From: Malacoraja senta
Lineage: Eukaryota
Direction of reading: 5' to 3'
Assembly: GCA_038087875.1 (NCBI GenBank)
Contig: CM075990.1
Coordinates: 13,330,001-13,394,000, forward strand
Length of the DNA stretch: 64,000 bases
Shown here: piece by piece, positions 3,215-39,100 of the stretch
How the letters are laid out: each line of letters begins with the position of its first letter
Numbering within the stretch: the stretch's first letter is position 1
The notes under the pieces: generated by a model
Told to the model about the DNA's origin: nothing
What the model saw: the letters and a program-made list of their open reading frames with translations, nothing else
Database searches by the model: none
Program-made: the position numbers and the translations under genes

Positions 3215-4045
3215 TCTCACGATCCAGACTTCTATAATGCATAGCCCCATATTGTGTGGCTGGGAAGGCAGCTACCATCCTGCCCATCACCCTTGCAACC
3301 TGCCGTATAGTAGGCTTCTCATTTTTAAGTTGTAAAAATTCTCATTTGTAAATAGCCTAGGGGCTGTACTCAACCCATTAGGTAGAGCCTTAAATTGCCA
3401 CCACTGGCCTTGCCAGATAAACTTCAGATATGTACTGTGACTCTCAAAGGTTCAAAGGTTCTTTATTAGTCATATACACCAATTGGTGTTGTGAAATGCG
3501 TATTGCCATTGCAGCACATAAGAAAAAAGAATACAAACATAACAATAATAAAGAAATTTAAACATAAATCAAATCATAAATTAATTAAACATAAATTAAA
3601 CTCTCATGTATTGGTACCGAATAATATGCATCTTTGAGATCGATTGAGGCCTTAAAGCAATCCTCTGTAATCGGCTGTTTTGCTGAATGAAAATTATCCA
3701 TCTTAAAATGGTTATATTCCCAGCATGTGTTCAGACTAGCCACATCAAGAATGATTCGGTATGCTCCATTTTCGACCTTGTGAAGATGTTAGAAATATAT
3801 TCCTCTTGTGCATGGACAGTTTTCTCAATCACATAATTTTTGTGCAATTTCACTACCTCTACTTGGATAGCTGTAGTTTCCTCTTGACACCGAATGTACG
3901 GGAATTTTGGCTTCTCTTGCTGTGGAGGAAACTGGTCAGACAGAAACTCAATCTTATATCCATTTATGGCTTGTAAAATGAAAGGTTCAGTGATTATCTC
4001 TCTCCACCTGCTCCTGAACAGTCTCAATCTACCTCCCACTTAAAT
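3215..4045 (-). pseudogene. DIRS reverse transcriptase remnant
   Basis: GGRLRLFRSRW..GYKIEF, HFKMD..SIDLKDAYYSVPIH, WQFKALPNGLSTAPRLF; the YxDD region is deleted; 153-bp insertion 3447-3599 with ACTCTCA TSD. Confidence 0.85.
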
Positions 4046-4199: not shown

Positions 4200-5683
4200 G
4201 TGGAGTGCGCAGCCTCCATGGTGAGCTCTGCGAACCTGCGCATTAAAAAAGGCCTCTGGCTCTGTCTTAGTTGTGTAGGCCTGGTGCTCCAACCAGCCTC
4301 AGTGTCGCGGTTTCTGCCGTTAGCTTGGTGGGGATGATATGCATGCCGGTAGTCGCGTCTTACCCACAGAGGGTGTCTTTACCACACCCACGGCAGCCTT
4401 GTATTCCTCTTGCAAGTCTTTTACTTGCTTGCTCAAATCTTCTCCGAAAAGTTACTTCGCAGACTGCACATTGTTTGCCTTGCACAAATGAGCATATTTT
4501 GGGTTTATCTCAGGCTTTATACAATTCTTGTGAATGCAATTCAAGTCGTCAAGTGAGTTTATTGTCATGTGTCCCCGATAGGACAATGAAATTCTTGCTT
4601 TGCTTCAGCACAACAGAACATAGTAGGCATTGACTACAAGGCATTCTATAAATATATACACACATGAATCAATATACTGATAAAGTGCAAATAACAGTAT
4701 TGGCTAATAAAGTTCAGTGTTATGTCCGAGCCAGGTTTAATAGCCTGATGGCTGTGGGGAAGTAGCTATTCCTGAACCTGGTCGTTGCAGTCTTCAGGCT
4801 CCTGTACCTTCTACCTGAAGGTAGTAGGGAGATGAGTGTGTGGCCAGGATGGCGTGGGTCCTTGATGATACTGCCAGCCTTTTTGAGCTCAATTGAGCTC
4901 AAACTGTGCATTACACAGAAGTGCTAAGGCGTCTTGCTGCAATTCAGACAGCTGAGTTCCATCCACCGAACTTGCAAACCTTGCCGTAAACCCTCTTGTG
5001 AGAAGTCTCCGAACTTGCTGGAGTTTTAAGTCTTTTGACTTTCTTTTGCCATTCAGATTGTCCCAAATGGTGGCATTAACCTTCGGTACATCAAGTGTCT
5101 GGCTGTTATCAGGACTATCATACTTTCCAGCAGTGTCCTGCATGTTCTTCTCATTCAACTGGTGTGAAGTCAAGTATACAATGCTACTCGCCAGTTCTTC
5201 CTCTAACGGTTTTGTCGCGAGTGCCGGCAGCTCCTTTTTAGTCGTGAGTTGAAGCGTATCAACCACTTGTTGAGGGAATTCTAGTTCATTGTCGACTTCC
5301 CTGCAGTCAGTGTCTACCACGTAATAATCCTCAAATCTCCCCGCCTCTGAGCGGGAGATATCATAATCCAACCCTTGACCAGGTATTGCCGTCGCAGACA
5401 TCTGACTGGAACTGCCTGTATTGGTCGCATGTGTGCGGTGCATATTTCCTCCGACCAGCCTCTCAATCAGGTTTTGAGAGGCAACAGTTGACATCCCCAT
5501 TGGATGTTGAGGCAGTATTGTCCTTTTGGGCAGTCTTTGCCAGTTTAACCATGGCCTTCCCCAAACTCGAGGTCGACAAACTGCTCCCTTTTGGCGCCTT
5601 TGCGGAGGTTGCTGTGCAGGCCGTGCATGCCAGCGTCTCCTAGCTAGATACAGACGGCCATCGACCTCTCCTGTTGCCGTCAT
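4200..5683 (-). pseudogene. DIRS gag-like ORF1, split by a Rex1 fragment
   Basis: ORF 4889..5683 (VPKVNATIWDNL..DLKLQQV) resumes past the insertion as IKPEINPKYAHLC..LFGEDLSKQVK. Confidence 0.7.
4542..4889 (-). mobile_element. Rex1/Babar-like non-LTR 3' fragment nested in DIRS gag
   Basis: IIKDPRHPGH..LLPSGRRYRS..TTRFRNSYFPTAIRLLN C-terminal motif; short CAATT duplication at the flanks. Confidence 0.75.
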
Positions 5684-7504
5684 TTGCCACTGAATCTTCA
5701 GCCACTGTTTTTAGGCTTCTCCATTCTTGGGACCCAAGCCAGCGTCGAAAGCAGTAAACACAGTTCCTGTGAAATCTTACCTTTCGGCTTTAATGGCGTA
5801 TTTCAGGGAAATCCCCGATGTCCATTTCCCCTTCCGAATCTCGCGCCATGCGTCGACGTATTGAAGCGCATGGATGCTGCCGAGTTCTTCACGTAGTCTC
5901 ATGACGAGACTTCGAAATAAAATCACAATGTGACAACGGCTGATGAATCTAGTGATGTGAGTGAGGGTTAAATATCAGGCAAGATATCAATAATAATGCC
6001 TTGCTCTTCAAAGAATTGCCATGGATTTCTTTATAAACGACTGTCTGGGTCTGAGGTTGAGGCTTGGTCTATAATGTCACGTGTAAGATGACATTTCAAG
6101 TGGTATTTTCTTGGTACTTTATGGGGAATTGACAAGGAGTGGAGGCTTGGAGTGCGCTGCGTTGGCTGGTGGTGTTGGAGGCAGGTATAATAGTGGCGTT
6201 TAAGATGCTTTTAGTTTGGGATATGGAACTGCAGGGAATAGAGGGATATGGATCTTGTGCAGGCAGATGAGATAACTTTAATTTGACATCATGTTCGGCG
6301 AAAACATTGTTCCTGTGCTCTATGTTCTAATTTTCCAAATGGAATTTGAACCCCAAAGCTTCTGATTCAGAGGCCAGCACATTACTCACTGCACTATGAT
6401 TTAGTGTGACAATTTGACAGGCCCCATTCCATAACACAAATGAAAGTTAAAAAGTGTCATGAGACACTGTCCATTTGGTGTAAACACCTTCCTTATAAGC
6501 CAGCAAACAGTGCGAACCATTTGTCATGCTGGGCATCATTGGTAACATTGGTAACAGATGAGGCACGCTACAATCCCCAGGCAGGCTCTCATACCTTGTT
6601 AACCCCTGCCCAAGAATCATCAGCAGGACAGATTTATGTGTTTCCTCTGCAATAACTCTGGTAAAGGCCAGTGGAGAGCAGATCGAGGTGCGCTCAGGCT
6701 CACTGCTGGCAGACTGTTCCTGGAACCAAGCAGAAACTGTATCTGACACCTATTGATGTTTCTGATCTCACCGTGACCTGCTTTATTGTTCCCTGCATGT
6801 GGAGGTTAACTTGTTTTAATGCCAACATGTCCCTTATTGACGGAGCATTTGATGGTGTTATCTTCCTGGTTATATGCCCATAATCACAGAAAGAACTGCA
6901 GCAATTATGTCAATTGTTCATTCAGATTAAACTGCTTTACATGGAACTAAATTAGACCTTTAGAAATTGCAAATGGTAAAGAGACTTTTAATTCATGGAT
7001 CAACTAAGTAAGTCAAATAAGTCAAATCTTTGCTACTACAGTCACAAAATGTATTAATATGGTAGGAATTCTCCTGCAGTACAAACATAAGGATTATTTC
7101 TTTATGAAACCATCTGCTTATACCAGATAAGGCAACTAATAAAAAGCACTCATCCCATTGTAATCTCTGTTGAGATATACCAAATCAAGTATATCTCTGA
7201 GACTTCAGAACAGTAATTGGGATTTGGGGATTAAATCAATGTCAGCTATTATAAAAGCTATGACCTTTGGAGTCCTTACAGTCTTTGTAATCCTTCAGTC
7301 AATTATGCCTCTGGCACATCCCTGATTTTCATCCCTTCTACAATGGTCACGCCTTGGCCATGAAATCTTGGGAGAATGGGTTAGAGAGGCAACAGAGTTT
7401 GCAGCTTAAGACAGGATCACCACGGGAGCAATAATGGAAAACAGAGACTTTCAATAGGTAGAATTTAAGCAGTGGAGAGATCTAGAAGAACTAATTTACG
7501 AGGA

Positions 7505-24100: not shown

Positions 24101-27100
24101 CAAACCCATCTCAGCAGTCACTTTGTGAAATTAAGCAAAGCCATCGGGTGAAAGGGGAAAGATTAAAATGAATAATTAATTATTTCACATTAAAAATTAA
24201 AATGCAACTACTTATTTCCAATGCACAAACAGTAAATCAAAATTCTTTCAAATCCATGGGCAGTGGTTCACAAATTGAATTTTCAACCAAGCACACAACA
24301 AATTTTACTTACGTAAAATAACCAGGTGGCAATCCTGTTCCCCGTGCCCAGCTCTTTGAAAGCATCAGGTTCGTCTTTCTACATTGAAACAAGAGAATCT
24401 TTAACAGTTGTAGCTGTTGCTATACCTATACCATAGGCCGTGGCATTTTTCAATTTCAAGCATTAACAATTACTTAATGGACAATTTATGTACAATTCCT
24501 TTTTCTGCATTTTCGTGAGAAGCTCTAATGCATACATACTTTGACAAATGGATTCATTTATCTCGTAAAGTAGTAGATAAAGCAAATGTACATAAACAAA
24601 TATTTGCATATAATTTTTTTCGCAGACCTCAATTTGAGGGTTACAGCAATTTGTTCCAGTAGCACGATGCAGAGCAAGCAAAATTAAACCATGAACCAAC
24701 AACAAATTACTCAGCTTCCATCTCTGCATTTTGAATTCAAAAATTTCAGATCAGATTTCTGTTTCTCAGCTCTGATTCACTTGATGCAAGGTTATCAGAC
24801 CTAATTTGCATATTGTGTAGGAAGGAACTACATCCACCACTCTCTCTTAGGCAGGACCGACATCATTTGTCATTGGGCTTCTCCACCCTACTTTTTGCAT
24901 ATCTTTCATTCTCTCGTTTCCCTTTCCCATGACTATCAGGCTGAAGAAGGGTCTCGACCCGAAACGTCACCCACTCCTTCTCTCCAGAAATGCTGCTTGT
25001 AACGCTGAGTTACTCCAGCGTTTTGTGTCTATCAGTCATTCTCTTTATTGTCTGTGAAGCTTAATGTGCATGTTTTCTTACTTGCACAGTTCTGATGAAA
25101 GTTTTCGATCTGAAATGTTGATTTTGTCTCACTGCAGATGCTGTCGGACTCAATGACGACCTCCATTATTTTCTGTTTTGCAAGACGCATCCAGTGCTAC
25201 ATTGAACTGGGATTTGAGTCTGCCTTCCATCCTGCGTGTATTTTGAGTTACCTTCTGGATTTACGTGCTACTTCCCTTGCCACTATTCTCTTCACGATTT
25301 GTGCAAATCTCATCTTATTTTTAAGTTTACATCATTCAGGTCAACCATGCACCTGATATCTTATTATAACTTACTCATATGTAGACAAAAATGCTGGAGA
25401 AACTCAGCGGGTGAGGCAGCATCTATGGAGTGAAGGAAGAGGCGACGTTTCGGGAAGGATCTCGACCCGAAACGTCGCATATTCCTTCTCCCCATAGATG
25501 CTGCCTCACCCGCTGAAATTCTCCAGCATTTTTGTCCACCGATTTTTCCAGCATCTGCAGTTCCTTCTTAAACAAAACTTAATCATAAGTTGTTTTTCAG
25601 AGATTTCTGGTGGCCAACTCCTGTTCAATAATGGACACTTTCAAAAGCAACAAATAACATTCAAAAGCAAATTCGTGGTCCTAATCTCCAATTTATTATC
25701 AAGGGGAAGCATTTTCTGACCCAGAATCCAGAATCCCAGTGCTGGATTCTATCAAATGTTAATTTGAATGCATGGAAGGACTATAGTTGATGGCCTTTGG
25801 TGCTAATCAGGGTAATCTGTTATTTACCAAGAACAATGTGCAAAGCAACAGGCTTGTAATTTGAAACAGAATGTTTTTTGTTTTACAAAATATTGTTGGA
25901 TTTTGCATGGTTAATTTTGCATTAGCTCATGCCAAATGTTTGAACATTGCGACGAGGAACAAAAACCCACATTAGCAAGGTTATAATAATTATGCAGCAA
26001 GTGCCTGGAATATAACCAAGATCATTTGATCCATATAAAATTAAGCAGTCAGCATTAATAGGCAACATGTTGATCAACATGTGAGATATCACTACACCAT
26101 GAAAATTAGCTAATTAGAATTTTTTAACACAGTGATAATGAAATGCCAGCATGTCGAGAAGTAAAAGAAATGAAATACAGCAATGATCTCATCAATAATA
26201 CTGTGGTCAAACCATATCAGTCATTACTTCTCAGAGGTGTTGACAAACGGAATATCCATACGCTATTTATTAAAATATGCAGGTTTGACAACACACTCCA
26301 AAATCCAGTTAGCAAGTCAGTAAGGCAAAATGGTGGCCGATGCCAATTTTAAACTTATGGCATTCTCCCTCCACAACAGCAAAAACTATCACCAAGATTG
26401 CAGAGATAGAATGTTCTGGATTCACACTGATCAATCAATATGACTTTGACCAAATTTAATGCTGCCCTGAGAGTGACAGAAAGTAGAGCTTGGAAACAAA
26501 GCCATTTGGCCCAGCTTGTCCATGCTGATCAGTGGGCACCCTGCTGTATTAATCCCACCTCCCAGCACCTGGTCCACAGCTGAAGCAATTCAAGTGCCCA
26601 TTGAAGACACTTCTTCCATGCTATCAGCAACTCAGCTTCAACTACTACGTTTCTGGTACTTACCACTCTCTGGGTGAAGATTTCCCTTATACCCCCTTTA
26701 AATCTCTGCTCCTCTTTACCCTAAGTACGTGCCCTTTTATACCCCTCATAATTGTATATAGTTCAATCATGTCTCCTCTTCCACTCCCACACCTAGTTTC
26801 TCTAGCCTTTCCTCACAACTGATCTGCTCCATCCCAGACAACATCTCCTCAGCACCCTCTCCAATGCTATCACATGTTCCTACAGCAGGCTGATCAGAAC
26901 TGCAGGCCGTAGTGTGCAGCTGAGGTGCGACCAAGGTTTAAGAAAGTTGAAGCATAACTTCCCTACTTGTGTGTTCAATGCACTGACAAATGAAAGCCAG
27001 TATTCCGTATGCTCTCCTAACCTTGCGCAATGTTATTGATTAGGGCTGCTTTATCTATGCAAAAGCATTGCAGCGATGCAACTTTTGTGACTCTACTTGC

Positions 27101-30100
27101 CCGTGCAAAGTCATGATGAGGCTCATACTGCCCACCCACGCCATAATTAGCCACCTGAAAAAGAAATAAGTGGTGACAAAGAGTTGAAAAATAACACTTA
27201 CCCGTCCAAAATCAAAATGAGGTTCATACTGGCCCCCAACCCCATAATTGGCCACCTGTTCAAAATGAGAGGTTACAGAGAACCAGTCAAACGCTCAGTA
27301 TTTCTCAGCGAACAATTCACAGGATTAAGATAAAACCAAATGTATAGTTACACGTCAGTGGCACACAGGTTTACCAGTCATGACAGAGGCTTCTTTTAAA
27401 CTGGAGTTGGGATTTACACTTGGCATTGTATTTTAATTGCACTAACATCAACACATTAGACCTGTTCTAACAAAATCCAACATCTTGCATCTCCACAGTT
27501 AATCAGATTTTTCTTTTGCATTAATTATAATGATGGTTGAGGAAATACTAATGTTCACTGTTATATCATAACAGCAACTGTTTCATAGTCCAACTTCCTC
27601 CTGTGACAAAAAATAATCATGGACATGATTTAAGGTCCAGGCAAAGACAAATTTTCCCTGTCAAGCTAGTTTAAATGGAGTTTAATGTGAATATTTAATG
27701 TGCTAACATCATGGAGTAATAGCGATGGTACTGTAAACATAATGGAATATGCATCATCTTTATTGGTGAAAATTCTTCCAACATTTAAAATGAAGAATAT
27801 TCATGGGTCAGAGGGCAGTGGAGAAAAGTAACTTCCATTTGTAACTCCACAAATACTGCCACAAATTACCTCCATTATTTCTGCGTTCCAGAATCTCTGG
27901 TATTTTGCTTTATCTCAGGTACTGAAATTAGGTGGGACGCAGCCTTCAAGCCACTTACTTAATTAACTCTTTTCGCAAAGAATTCTACCTTAACTCAATG
28001 CTACTAGTTAGTTTAGTTTATTGTCACGTGTGCTGAGGTACACTGAAAAGCTTTTGTTGAACAGCTTTGTGGAGCACTGCAGTTCAAATTCTGCTAGTTT
28101 TTAAATGTATATGCACACCAAGTGTCTGTTGCTGTCATTCAGATAAATACTCACTGTCTTATTTATGAGGACCTAATCCCAGTTCTCCAAGATCTTTTTG
28201 CTCAATGTTCAGTTCAGCACCTACCTGTAGCTCTTCTGCTGTGGAAACATCAAGACCCGTGAGATCTTGTATCCGCTTGTTAATTTTGTTTATTACGGGA
28301 TCTTCATAACCTGACAGCCAAGCACTGGGCAGAAGCAAAAACATGTTCAAGTTAATGTCCTACATATTTTCACCTGTACTCTCATTTAATGTATCACAAC
28401 ACATTTCCTACCCGCGTTCATACATTCTTAACTAGTTGTAACTACGCACTTCAAAGTCTTAACCTAGTTAGATTTCTTCGGGTATGAAAATGATCAAATT
28501 AAATAATTTTAGAATGATCCTCAACAACATAAGATCTCCCTCGGCATTTTAACCCGTTAATCATTGCTTGGTATGGGCAGGGAGGTTAGTCCACAGAAAA
28601 GTTCTGATGAATGCAGATTCGTCTCAAATTTAGACAGCTACATTATTCAATGACCAACTCATGGATAAAAAAATCACAAATAATACCGGGGGAGATCAAT
28701 TTCATATTCCATATCATGCCCTTATGAAAAAGGCGGCAGCTATTTGGCCCGTCAAGTCTATGACAGGTCTCACTTTGGCCCATGTTAATCCTTTCACTTA
28801 TTTCCCCGATTCCATTAATTGTGCTCAGACGCCACTGTCACGGCACTAGGCATTCATAACACATCTACAATTACAGCTAAGTCAATATTCAAAGATAATA
28901 GAAACATAGAAAATAGGTGCAGGAGGAGGCCATTCGGCCCTTTGAGCCAGCACTGCCATTCATTGTGATCATGGCTGATCGTCCCCAATCAATAACCCGT
29001 GCCTGCCTATTCCCCATATCCCTCGACTCCACTAGCCCCTAGAGCTCTATCTAACGCTCTCTTAAATCCATCCAGTGACTTGGCCTCCACTGCCCTCTGT
29101 GGCAGGGAATTCCACAAATTCACAACTCTCCGGGTGAAAAAGCTTTTTCTCACCTCAGTCTTAAATGACCTCCCCTTTATTCTAAGACGGTGGCCCCTGG
29201 TTCTGGACTCGCCCCACATTGGGAACATTTTTCTGTAATGCTAACAATGTTTTCAGTTTCCTCCCACCCTCCAAAGACGTACAGGTTTGTAGGTTACTTG
29301 GCTTGGTAAATGTAAAAATTGTCCCTAGTGGGTGTAGGATAGTGTTAATGTGCGGAGATCGCTGGTCGGCGCGGACCCGGTGGGCCTGTTTCCGCACTGT
29401 ATCTCTAAACTAAACTACGGGAAGGAATTGTGTGTGGAGCGAGAGAGGAAGCAATGAGGAAAAGCTTCAAATTTAGTTTAATAATAATAATAATAATACT
29501 TTATTGATCCCCTCAGGGAAATTCAGAGAAATGAGAATAATGAGAAATACTAGGGGAAATGATCACCTAAGGTATAACCACACACAAATAAACCACAGAT
29601 AATTATCATTTCTTGATTACACTGATGTTGCTGCATCATCCTTTTCGGTTTTACTGAACAGTGTTTGAAATAATTGGAATAATTTAATTTTCTCACCACA
29701 TACAATAACAATGGAACTTGCTTACAGCAGATGTTCAATGACTTAAAAATACAAATTCCAAGTAAAAGACCATCCAATCTGGTTGCAACAGGTCTACCAG
29801 CCAACTCTATGCAATAAACTGCCTTCTGAGTTGGAGGCTTGTGACCCTAACCTCACTACAGAGATTTATATAATCTGGGTTGGTACTTAACTGATCATTG
29901 GGAAGGCACTTTGTAAATGATCTGATCAAGTGTCTCGAGATATTTTTATTACATTAAAAATGGTGGTTATTATTGTTTGAGAAGATGTTAAATAAAACCT
30001 ACTTGCCCTGTTAGTTTGGCACAATACTATTCAAGAGGTTTTTACTGGGTTGTGGCTAATAGCCATCTCTCAACAGGCATCATTACTATCAAGTTATTGG

Positions 30101-36100: not shown

Positions 36101-39100
36101 AAACAGGCTCATCTGTACAACTCGTCCATGCCGACCAATTGTCTAACCGAGCTAGTCCCCTGTGCCAGCAAGTTGGTCTTTGTGATATTAATTAAGGGAA
36201 TAAATACTGACCAGGAAAACCCTTGTGCTTTTCTTTAAACCATATAATAGAAATGTGTCTGGTTGTGCTACATACAGGTATGTTTCTGATACAAAAGGAG
36301 CTGATAAATTATAAATAAAAATTCTGACCTCAGGAGGCCAAGGAGGTATATGGGAAAACAATAGTGGATAAAGGGCGAGTTATGTGTTACTCAGAAAGTG
36401 ATATGGCCAGTTGCATGGAATAAGTGGAGTTTTGATTTCATTACCCACGGTGGCACAGCGGTAGAGTTGCTGCCTTACAGCGCTTGCAGCGCCGGAGACC
36501 TGGGTTCGATCCCAACTACGGGTGTTGTCTGTACGGAGTTTGTACGTTCTGCCCGTGACCACGCGGGTTTTCTCCGAGATCTTCAGTTTCCTCCCACACT
36601 CCAAAGACGTACGGGTATGTAGGTTAATTGGCTTGGTGTTTGTGTAAAATTGTCCCTAGTGTGTATTGGATAGTGTTAATGTGTGATGATCGCTGGTCAG
36701 TGCGGATATGGTGGGCCAAAGGGCCTGTTTTCGTGCTGAATCTCTAAACTAAACACCTGAGATTTCATGCTGACTCATCGTGAATAGACGATGCATTGTG
36801 TAATTTGACGAGGCACCAACTCTTTACCGAGAGACATCACTTTAACAATGGGCTCAACGGTCTCTTTCTGTTTTGTAAAACCACCACATGATCCAGATAC
36901 CCAAGAAATGAATTGATGGGAAAATTATCACTTCTATTAATAATATATCCAGAACCTTGTAGGGCTAACTACGGAGTTGATTTTCTCGGTTGAAACATTT
37001 TTAGAGCTGGACCTCCTGTGTAGACTCTGCACACTGTAATTACTGTTCCCTTTGGACTATGGGGAGCTACTTCCGCTGTAATAAATTGTTATTTTCCTTA
37101 CAAAAATAAGAATTTTAATTATACATTACACTCTACCAAAAATGCTAAAGAGCCAAGAATGTTGTGCTTCAGTTGCACTTTCTACAGGGACAATAGTCCA
37201 CCATATGCAGCAATTAGTCTTGTTAACCTTGTAACATCATATTGATATTCTGCTGTAATAAATATGTAAATTCATCCATAACCTACATTAGAATAATAAT
37301 ACTAGAAAATATCAAATGTTAAGACAGTAAAGTTGCAATGAATAATACAATCAGAGATCAGAAATGCATTAGGTATACCGATACACATCATCTCACTTTC
37401 CAAACACAAGTCACACTACTAACAAAACATTCACAAATATTAAGGGAACAAGACCAACCTGTTTGGAAGATAGTTCCCTGGGCTAATTTAAATTGATGAA
37501 TTCAAACTGTGCATCAATTTCTGCTTCTTCGCAGTCATTGAAACCTCATTCTGACCAATTAACCAAAATCCTCAAGCTCTGCAGTTTGACTATTTGGTGA
37601 TTCCAGGCACTGGATAATGAGTCTTGCATCATTTAGTAAATGCTCTTCGAAATCTCAACAGAATGTGTTGAGGAGTTGGACAAAATAAAAACCCATCCTT
37701 CATAACAGGACAATGAAGCTTCTCACACCTTCAATGCACGTGGCGGTAGTCTTTACCCTTTGTTGTTGCACTGTTAGAGAGTACCTCATACCTTCCCCTT
37801 ACCTTTTGGAGACTGTAAGTTGCAACAGTCAACTGGCCAGTCACAGGGTTATGCACTGTGGCACGCTTCAGCTACAGAAAGAGAAAGGGCATATTTAATC
37901 CTGGAACAGCCAGATCACCACTCATTAGTGGAACTCTGGAAGCTTCCGATTGGTCAGGATATGTGAAAATGGAGAAGGGCAAGTACTGCAAATGGGGCTG
38001 CGTTCCAATTCAATGTCCTTTCACTTTTCAAAATTTGGAGAAGTTTTACCTCGTAGTGAGGTTAGGAGGAATGGATGACTACACTGATTAACTGCTTGCA
38101 TACACTCGAACCCAATGGTTCTGTCAGCATATTTTGCATTTCATCAATGTGTTGAATAATTCAGCCTTTTTCCTCAGTCGTCATCTCTTCACCTGGTTCA
38201 CGTCATTGGATGCCAGCTTCCAAACATGCCTGGTCTGAACCAGATGCAGCAGCCTCGCTGCGAAGAGGAGCTGCCACAGCTCTCGCTTACCTTTTGCTTA
38301 TTCTGTAATGAGCTGTCTCCAGAACTCCAGTTATTGGGTTAGAAATGGTGGCTCGTCTCAGCTGTGGAGCCAACCAATCAGAAAAAAAGCAGAGATTATT
38401 ACCAGCTTGACTGGATGCAAAACAGGACCAATCAGAATCCTTCCAGTGGGGAAAGAACTAAGCCCATCACACTGGAACGACCATTCTTGGGTCCCTTCCC
38501 CAACACTCTGTGGCTCGTGCAGCTAACAGCAACAGCCACATCTCGGTAAAGCTGAAATTCATGGAAAGCCCCTTTGAAACAGGTTAACTATTTCAGAATT
38601 CTTTTCAAACATTAATAACAACCAGGGGATGAATTTTGCAGTTTTACCGCAAGTTTTCACTGAAATAACAACAACAAAAAATGTCTGTGGTAAACAATGA
38701 TAAGAAGTGCTGGTTCACTCAGGGACAACAGCAATACAAAAAAAGCAGGAAAGATGACCTTAGAATACAATGCAATTTCATTTTATCATTAAGTAATTTA
38801 AAATTGAATGTGCTAGCAATTTTTGTGCCACTTTGTTGCAATAATTCCATTTCATAATTTTAATCCAGCTCTGCTGATTTGGAGTATATCAACATTTATT
38901 GTCACTCAATCATCAATCTTACTTGGGAAGTCAGAGGGTCGGAGTATTTTAACTGAATGTGCTGCATGGAGACAAATGGAACCAATAGCTTTTACAGATC
39001 CTGTATTTTCTTTATTACTTTACTTAATTTTCAGGATCTGGCATCATTGACAAGGCCTTCATTTATTACCTGCCCTCAAATTGCTTGTAAGATGTGCTGA

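What the first reader, a model, noticed from the sequence alone, without database searches (positions are those of the whole stretch)
27101..27255. Duplicated catalytic HxD exon of P4HA1: a second mutually exclusive exon pair (HFDFGR vs HHDFAR)
Seen: 47 nt downstream of exon 12a lies a second 54-nt exon in the same phase, encoding VANYGVGGQYEPHHDFAR. It has a good pyrimidine tract and AG and a consensus GC donor (CGG|GCAAGT). The copies differ at 7 synonymous positions but only 2 codons (F to H between the Fe ligands, G to A), with no indels or stops, which suggests an old duplication under purifying selection. Known: vertebrate introns this short are essentially unspliceable, and that enforces mutual exclusion sterically. 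P4HA1 is known for the exon 9/10 pair and P4HA2 for a pair at the next exon; I know of no pair at the HxD exon. Inference: splicing swaps residues inside the Fe/2-oxoglutarate active site, giving up to 2x2 catalytic isoforms together with exons 9/10. Human has FDFAR, a mosaic of the two copies, so lineages may have kept different copies.
Basis: partly seen in the sequence, partly recalled or inferred. Interest (0 to 1): 0.92.

Follow-up and report, generated by a model that had tools for sequence, protein, structure and literature searches.

The report
Ancient twin catalytic exons in P4HA1

Summary
On the minus strand, exon 12a (27255-27202, ..HFDFGR) and exon 12b (27154-27101, ..HHDFAR) are separated by a 47-nt intron. 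Both keep the reading phase. 12b has a strong pyrimidine tract and a GC donor (gcaagt).

The pair is not specific to this lineage. Frog and falcon P4HA1 loci have the same layout: the FGR exon, a 53- or 63-nt intron, the FAR exon, then gcaagt. RefSeq models for a caecilian already list all four combinations of exon 9 or 10 with 12a or 12b. A mammal keeps only the FAR type, with a GT donor. Eel and sturgeon keep only the FGR type.

Differences between copies and between species are almost all synonymous, so both copies have been under long purifying selection. The best reading is a mutually exclusive pair more than 450 million years old, enforced by an intron too short to splice.

RNA contigs from two related organisms show exon 11 joined to 12a and 12a joined to exon 13. 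Use of 12b is supported only indirectly, by a contig break exactly where an 11-to-12b junction would branch.

The His between the iron ligands (HHD) appeared in none of about 120 sampled relatives. I found no paper describing this pair. Interest is moderate.

The parts
28225..28324 (-). P4HA1 exon 11 (..AWLSGYEDPVINKINKRIQDLTGLDVSTAEELQ). Its donor at 28225 feeds either copy of exon 12.
   Evidence: Gene model. The junction 28225>27255 is seen in RNA contigs of X1 (depth 156) and X2 (depth 425).
27202..27255 (-). Exon 12a, 54 nt, phase 0-0, ..YEPHFDFGR. It has a purine-interrupted acceptor tract and a strong gtaagt donor. It is the FGR type, orthologous to frog and falcon 12a.
   Evidence: The junctions 11>12a and 12a>13 (27202>24378, X2 depth 383) are.
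27155..27201 (-). 47-nt mini-intron between the twin exons. The only yUnAy-like branch motif lies 35 nt from the 5' splice site. If the intron is retained, the 155-nt unit shifts the frame and a stop follows in exon 13/14.
   Evidence: The homologous introns are 53 nt (frog), 63 nt (falcon) and 66 nt (turtle model).
27101..27154 (-). Exon 12b, 54 nt, phase 0-0, ..YEPHHDFAR. It has a strong pyrimidine tract and cag acceptor. It is the FAR type, orthologous to tetrapod 12b, with a lineage-specific F>H between the iron ligands.
   Evidence: In RNA contigs it is covered only at intron-level depth (12-14). The contigs end at 27157 in both X1 and X2.
27095..27100 (-). GC-type 5' splice site of 12b (gcaagt). 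Frog and falcon have the same gcaagt. The single mammalian exon has gtaagt instead.
27088..27113 (-). Predicted 9-bp hairpin spanning the end of 12b and its GC donor. This is an inferred, weakly supported regulatory element.
   Evidence: -10.3 kcal/mol, z -2.96. Weaker analogues (-5.5) occur at frog and falcon 12b. None occurs at the 12a donors or at the mammalian exon.
24313..24378 (-). Exon 13 (KDEPDAFKELGTGNRIATWLFY), the common acceptor for 12a or 12b.

Best explanation
The gene is the P4HA1 orthologue, the alpha(I) subunit of collagen prolyl 4-hydroxylase, of a non-mammalian jawed vertebrate. Its 54-nt exon encodes the 2-oxoglutarate-binding Tyr, the betaI-betaII catalytic loop and the His-x-Asp iron ligands. 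This exon is present as an ancient tandem pair, 12a (FGR type) and 12b (FAR type). The duplication predates the split between this lineage and bony vertebrates, because the order of the copies, the very short intron and the GC donor of 12b are all shared with frog and falcon.

Inferred mechanism. The 47-nt intron cannot hold U1 at the 12a donor and U2 at a branch point for 12b at the same time, since that distance is under 50 nt. A transcript therefore carries one copy or the other. If the mini-intron is retained, the frame shifts and a premature stop follows, which would mark the transcript for decay. 12a has a weak acceptor and a strong donor. 12b has a strong acceptor and a weak GC donor, possibly hidden in a hairpin. 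This makes 12b the regulated or minor choice and 12a the default in the libraries examined.

The two protein isoforms keep all catalytic residues. They differ by Gly or Ala two residues after the Asp ligand, at the start of the substrate-binding betaII-betaIII loop. In this lineage they also differ by Phe or His between the ligands.

Shown here: the sequence anatomy, the conservation, the purifying selection and the use of 12a. Inferred: the use of 12b in this lineage, the steric mechanism, and any catalytic difference between the isoforms.
For: Anatomy and statistics.

Orthology to P4HA1: the rebuilt 507-aa product is 80-82% identical to tetrapod P4HA1 and 65-67% identical to chondrichthyan P4HA2.

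Same architecture elsewhere. Falcon has 12a|gtaagt, a 63-nt intron, then 12b|gcaagtaaagag. The frog Rhinophrynus has the same with a 53-nt intron.

Both exons are used in public models. Microcaecilia RefSeq X1-X4 differ only in the exon 9/10 block and in the 12a/12b block. Bird and turtle models of 575-580 aa carry both copies with the mini-intron read through in frame.

Selection on 12b. Against falcon 12b it shows 7 synonymous changes and one changed codon, dN 0.05 and dS about 1.06. The chance of one or fewer amino-acid changes is 8e-5 for 9 random substitutions and 0.015 for 5.

Reciprocal loss without relics in a mammal, an eel and a sturgeon.

RNA. The 11>12a and 12a>13 junctions appear in two relatives. 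The pre-mRNA contigs of X1 and X2 both stop at 27157. This is the 12b start plus the 3 nt 'cag' that the mini-intron shares with the end of exon 11, and it is exactly where an 11>12b path would branch in a k=31 assembly graph. The same logic correctly predicts the contig start at 27230 for the proven 11>12a junction.

The steric criterion of less than 50 nt between donor and branch point comes from PMC5740500.
Against: No junction into or out of 12b appears among the joints shown for the four runs.

12b is covered only at intron-level depth, 12-14 against 156-425 for the 12a junctions.

The contigs run through the 12b donor without a break, so no 12b>13 path survived assembly.

The tissues are unknown. 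Contigs drop rare variants, and human-like exon contigs are filtered out, so this shows neither absence nor presence.

F>H lies at a position that is Phe in the sampled vertebrate P4HA1 and P4HA2 and Tyr in most sampled invertebrate C-P4H-like proteins. That could instead mean relaxed constraint on 12b in this lineage.

The RefSeq isoforms are automated models. I could not see their read support.

No other cartilaginous-fish P4HA1 locus could be fetched.
Confidence: 0.7

Rival explanations
1. 12b is an unused relic in this lineage. The ancestral pair was functional, but here only 12a is spliced, and 12b is a silent pseudo-exon that has begun to drift. F>H would be the first sign of that drift.
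For: Only 12a junctions are seen. HHD occurs in none of the sampled homologues. 12b has a weak GC donor that may also be sequestered.
Against: The frame, acceptor tract and donor are all intact. The divergence from tetrapod 12b is 7 synonymous changes against one changed codon, which is incompatible with long neutrality. Organism A's contig has at most one unlisted difference across 12b, while the flanking intron differs by about 2.6%. The contig break at 27157 in two runs fits use of the 12b acceptor. A very recent loss of use cannot be excluded.
Confidence: 0.2
2. 12b acts mainly as a regulatory poison unit. Inclusion of 12a, the mini-intron and 12b as one 155-nt exon shifts the frame, so the pair would tune P4HA1 output through nonsense-mediated decay and would not make a second enzyme isoform.
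For: The 155-nt unit gives a premature stop in exon 13/14. A bird RNA contig and bird models retain the mini-intron together with both exons.
Against: In birds and the turtle model the retained unit stays in frame (63- and 66-nt introns), so this is not a conserved property. Codon-level purifying selection on 12b would not be needed for a poison exon. No such joined form was seen.
Confidence: 0.07
3. The twin exon is an assembly or collapse artefact, or a very recent local duplication.
For: One public sturgeon model does carry a false double exon from an identical 427-nt assembly repeat.
Against: Here the copies differ at 10 of 54 nt and have different flanks. Independent runs from other organisms carry the same arrangement. 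Frog and falcon have the orthologous pair.
Confidence: 0.01

Closest known systems
P4HA1 12a/12b (FGR/FAR) pair as already modelled in RefSeq/UniProt for non-mammalian tetrapods (Microcaecilia unicolor X1-X4; Falco, Gallus, Phasianus, Gopherus, Alligator models)
   Same: Same gene and same 54-nt exon. The FGR copy comes first and the FAR copy second. The intron is very short (53-66 nt against 47 nt here). The second copy has a gcaagt donor.
   Different: This lineage's 12b has His in place of Phe between the iron ligands. Its mini-intron is the shortest seen and is out of frame. In the library I could search, the tetrapod pair exists only as automated models and not as a described finding.
P4HA1 exons 9/10, the published mutually exclusive pair (Helaakoski et al. 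1994, cited in PMC9676403)
   Same: Same gene. It is also a tandem homologous pair used alternatively in the catalytic domain. It is present in this window too (38361-38291 and 37871-37803).
   Different: Exons 9/10 encode the hairpin loop and are about 0.4 kb apart. The pair studied here encodes the HxD strand and is 47 nt apart.
P4HA2 exons 12a/12b (Nokelainen et al. 2001, cited in PMC9676403)
   Same: It is an alternative homologous exon pair in a paralogous C-P4H alpha subunit, next to the active site.
   Different: [quoted passage not shown] All sampled P4HA2 proteins have a single ..HFDFSR exon.
Steric-hindrance mutually exclusive exons, for example alpha-tropomyosin exons 2/3 (Smith and Nadal-Ginard 1989, from general knowledge; criterion in PMC5740500)
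   Same: The donor of the first exon and the branch point of the second are too close (under 50 nt) for both to be used in one transcript.
   Different: The mechanism is inferred here from the 47-nt length alone. No branch point was mapped and no minigene test was done.

Membership tests
P4HA1 (collagen prolyl 4-hydroxylase alpha-1) orthologue | Full-length similarity closer to P4HA1 than to P4HA2 or P4HA3 | tested here: met
   The rebuilt 507-aa product is 80-82% identical to amphibian and mammalian P4HA1 and 65-67% identical to skate, ray and chimaera P4HA2.
P4HA1 (collagen prolyl 4-hydroxylase alpha-1) orthologue | Catalytic residues: His-x-Asp, the distal His, the 2-oxoglutarate Lys and the Tyr residues | tested here: met
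   Both 12a and 12b keep NY, QY and H-x-D. Exons 15 and 16 keep RHAACPV and NKW. Residue roles are taken from PMC9676403.
Tandem-duplicated mutually exclusive exon pair | Adjacent homologous exons of equal length and phase | tested here: met
   Both exons are 54 nt and phase 0-0, with 44 of 54 nt and 16 of 18 aa identical.
Tandem-duplicated mutually exclusive exon pair | Both copies under purifying selection and conserved across species | tested here: met
   dN/dS is about 0.05-0.07 between copies and against tetrapod orthologues. The pair is present in frog and falcon.
Tandem-duplicated mutually exclusive exon pair | Mature transcripts carry exactly one of the two exons, and each is used | tested here: inconclusive
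   12a-only junctions were shown in two relatives. A 12b junction was not shown; the only sign is a contig break at 27157 that fits an 11>12b branch. Either-or isoforms exist as RefSeq models in a caecilian.
Steric-hindrance type of mutual exclusion | Donor-to-branch-point distance under about 50 nt | tested here: met
   The whole intron is 47 nt, and the only branch-like motif lies 35 nt from the donor. The criterion is from PMC5740500. The functional consequence was not tested.
Published C-P4H alternative exon pairs (P4HA1 9/10; P4HA2 12a/12b) | Same exon position as one of the published pairs | tested here: not met
   The published pairs affect the hairpin loop and the betaII-betaIII loop. 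This pair encodes the betaI-betaII loop and HxD.

The most novel reading that the evidence does not exclude
P4HA1 of jawed vertebrates ancestrally had a second regulated switch at its catalytic HxD exon. For more than 450 million years this switch was held together by a sub-minimal intron, a GC donor and a donor-masking hairpin. Mammals lost 12a and ray-finned fishes lost 12b, which would explain why the literature, centred on human and mouse, never described it. In this lineage the 12b isoform also carries His between the two iron ligands (HHD, seen in no other sampled C-P4H), which would give an enzyme with altered iron, 2-oxoglutarate or oxygen kinetics.
Probability: 0.3. Interest if true: 0.6.

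Novelty: new member of a known kind. Interest (0 to 1): 0.42.

Why it matters
C-P4H-I is the main enzyme that stabilises collagen, and its isoform repertoire has been defined from human and mouse. A second alternative exon pair in the catalytic strand, conserved from this lineage to birds, would mean most vertebrates can make up to four alpha(I) isoforms while mammals make two. It also gives a clean natural example of mutual exclusion by a too-short intron, with a GC donor conserved over a very long time. Recombinant enzymes could test whether Gly or Ala after the Asp ligand tunes the substrate-binding loop. The value is limited because automated annotation already shows the pair in other species, and because the constant protein difference is a single residue.

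Tried and rejected
1. I recalled that the P4HA2 12a/12b pair was this same 54-nt exon.

2. I tried a profile query built from a scaffold protein plus the window exons, to pull cartilaginous-fish P4HA1. MAFFT misplaced the fragments and the alignment was unusable.

3. A search with the 45-aa ORF starting at 12b found no candidates. The 66-aa ORF starting at 12a found only six fragments, none from a cartilaginous fish. I therefore could not fetch any other chondrichthyan P4HA1.

4. The representative search with exon 5 returned mostly exon-sized ORF fragments and invertebrate proteins.

5. Six encoding-contig look-ups (caecilian, frogs, teleosts, platypus) were not on record.

6. The double FGR exon in the sturgeon model is an identical assembly repeat and not biology.

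7. Long-range inverted repeats and a fold of the whole 221-nt unit (z +0.47) gave no sign of competing RNA structures.

8. Nucleotide distances alone do not separate a-type from b-type copies, because synonymous sites are saturated. Orthology rests on copy order, the Gly/Ala signature, the short intron and the GC donor.

9. Literature searches for the pair, including peptide strings, found nothing.

Full report
**Observation.** Reading the minus strand and checking it by script confirms the finding exactly. Exon 12a runs 27255-27202 and encodes VANYGVGGQYEPHFDFGR, flanked by acag| and |gtaagt. A 47-nt intron follows (27201-27155) and ends in a clean pyrimidine tract and cag. Exon 12b runs 27154-27101 and encodes VANYGVGGQYEPHHDFAR, followed by |gcaagt. 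The copies differ at 10 of 54 nt: seven synonymous third positions, TTT>CAT and GGA>GCA. Ten random substitutions would leave two or fewer amino-acid changes and no stop about once in 10,000 trials. NG86 gives dN 0.076 and dS 1.06.

**The gene.** I rebuilt the gene on the minus strand from stop-free segments and splice sites. Exons 2-7, 9, 11, 12a and 13-16 all have AG/GT borders and give a 507-residue product. The first coding exon was not located. That product is 80-82% identical to tetrapod P4HA1 and 65-67% identical to skate, ray and chimaera P4HA2, so this is the P4HA1 orthologue. According to PMC9676403, the 18 residues of exon 12 cover the 2-oxoglutarate Tyr, the betaI-betaII loop with the catalytic Tyr, the His and Asp iron ligands, and the first residues of the betaII-betaIII loop.

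**The pair is ancient and already in public models.** A search with a brachiopod P4HA listed vertebrate P4HA1 models that carry both copies:
- Falcon, stork, pheasant, chicken and shearwater models of 575 aa and a tortoise model of 580 aa contain FGR, then 21-22 residues that read like a retained intron, then FAR.
- An alligator model has the two copies back to back.
- The caecilian Microcaecilia has four RefSeq isoforms. They differ only in the exon 9/10 block and in three residues of exon 12.

Genomic loci confirm the architecture. Falco has 12a|gtaagt, a 63-nt intron, then cag|12b|gcaagtaaagag. The frog Rhinophrynus has the same with a 53-nt intron and the same gcaagtaaagag. The three-way alignment shows the FGR copy first, the FAR copy second, a very short intron and a GC donor in all three.

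**Losses in other lineages.** A mammal (Tamandua) has one exon of the FAR type with a gtaagt donor. Eel P4HA1a and a sturgeon have one FGR exon. None has a relic of the other copy within 3 kb. The double FGR exon in the sturgeon model is an identical 427-nt assembly repeat. The mammalian sequence is therefore the 12b type and not a mosaic. The idea that lineages kept different copies holds.

**Selection on 12b.** Against falcon 12b, the window's 12b shows seven synonymous changes and one changed codon (dN 0.05, dS about 1.06). With nine random substitutions, one or fewer amino-acid changes would be expected 8 times in 100,000. Even with five substitutions the chance is only 1.5%. Long neutral drift of 12b is therefore excluded, although a recent loss of use is not. 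12a is strikingly conserved at synonymous sites, with 5 differences from frog 12a. The Phe>His change is unusual. Among the homologues I sampled the x of HxD is Phe, Tyr, Cys, Pro or Val, and never His. Organism A's contig has at most one unlisted difference across 12b, so it cannot carry TTT at that codon.

**RNA evidence.** No RNA run from the window's own organism was offered. Runs from related organisms were. I laid Logan contigs from four of them on 24250-28400. This gave the junction 28225>27255 in X1 (depth 156) and X2 (depth 425), and 27202>24378 in X2 (depth 383). Exon 12a is therefore used.

No junction with 12b is among the joints shown. 12b is covered only at the pre-mRNA level, depth 12-14. 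This gives no firm upper bound, for three reasons: contigs drop rare variants, human-like exon contigs are filtered out, and the tissues are unknown.

One indirect sign points to use of 12b. In both X1 and X2 the low-depth contig that runs from the downstream intron through 12b stops at 27157. That is the first base of 12b plus the three bases 'cag', which the mini-intron shares with the end of exon 11 (..CTACAG). In a k=31 assembly graph, that is where an exon 11>12b path would branch off. The same reasoning correctly predicts the other contig boundary, at 27230, for the proven 11>12a junction. No such break occurs at the 12b donor. Transcripts that use the 12b acceptor may therefore mostly still hold the downstream intron, or the mature form may be rare.

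A bird RNA contig (L006) shows exon 11 spliced to 12a, with the mini-intron, 12b and more than 580 nt of downstream intron retained.

**Mechanism (inferred).** The whole intron is 47 nt, and the only branch-like motif lies 35 nt from the 12a donor. This is below the roughly 50-nt donor-to-branch-point distance used as the steric criterion in PMC5740500. Retaining the mini-intron gives a 155-nt unit that shifts the frame and produces a stop in exon 13/14. This second safeguard is absent in birds, where the retained unit stays in frame.

12a has a purine-interrupted acceptor tract and a consensus donor. 12b has a strong tract and a GC donor. The 12b donor also sits in a predicted 9-bp hairpin (-10.3 kcal/mol, z -2.96). 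Frog and falcon 12b have weaker analogues, and the 12a donors and the mammalian exon have none. That rests on three species with different pairing registers, so it is only a lead. Wider folding and inverted-repeat searches found nothing.

**What the switch would change.** All catalytic residues are kept. The one difference conserved across vertebrates is Gly or Ala two residues after the Asp ligand, at the entry to the betaII-betaIII substrate-binding loop. P4HA2 varies that same loop through its own 12a/12b pair. In this lineage there is also Phe or His between the ligands. Any kinetic effect is untested. The closest solved structure is 7ZSC, the P4HA2 catalytic domain.

**Novelty.** I found no paper describing a pair at the HxD exon. 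The published pairs are P4HA1 9/10 and P4HA2 12a/12b. The pair is, however, visible in automated RefSeq and UniProt models of amphibians, birds and reptiles. It is therefore a further member of a known kind, a tandem mutually exclusive exon pair of the steric type, and not a new mechanism. Its absence from mammals probably explains the silence in the literature.

**Verdict.** I put the best explanation, an ancient functional mutually exclusive pair with 12a as the default, at about 0.7, and the silent-relic reading at about 0.2.

Noticed in passing
window 37803-37871 (-), with an alternative donor near 37792: Exon 10 of the known 9/10 pair is 69 nt against 71 nt for exon 9, so its gtaagg donor breaks the frame. 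A second gt 11 nt downstream restores the frame and adds three residues. It makes a full 2x2 isoform set uncertain in this species.
   Followed up: partly
window 24806-25083, 25362-25639 and 28003-28141: These stretches inside introns 12-13 and 11-12 have summed contig word depths of 10^3 to 4x10^5 in all four RNA runs, with many inconsistent joints. They are probably abundant interspersed repeats, and they break the pre-mRNA contigs.
   Followed up: no
L001, and proteins P0155-P0161 and P0157: Bird and tortoise P4HA1 'isoform X1' models of 575-580 aa read through the 63- or 66-nt mini-intron in frame and so carry both HxD exons. These are probably retained-intron products or model artefacts and not enzymes.
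   Followed up: partly
L002 13461-13941 (Acipenser sinensis, protein P0166): The two FGR exons in this model lie in an identical 427-nt repeat that also contains part of exon 11. This is an assembly duplication and not a real exon pair.
   Followed up: yes
window 27307-27585 and 26474-26890: These intronic stretches are present at depth 3-5 in organism C's RNA contigs, while none of the exons in the stretch were laid for those runs. This may be patchy pre-mRNA coverage combined with filtering of human-like exon contigs.
   Followed up: no
window 46362 and upstream: The first coding exon, carrying the signal peptide, was not found. The exon at 46362-46266 starts with a split Gly codon before QMTDL.., so unlike the layout I recall for mammals, the signal peptide is on a separate upstream exon.
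   Followed up: no
window 4892-5710 (-) and 3734-4039 (-): There is a 273-aa open frame and a 102-aa open frame downstream of P4HA1. Neither was examined. They could be a neighbouring gene or a mobile element.
   Followed up: no
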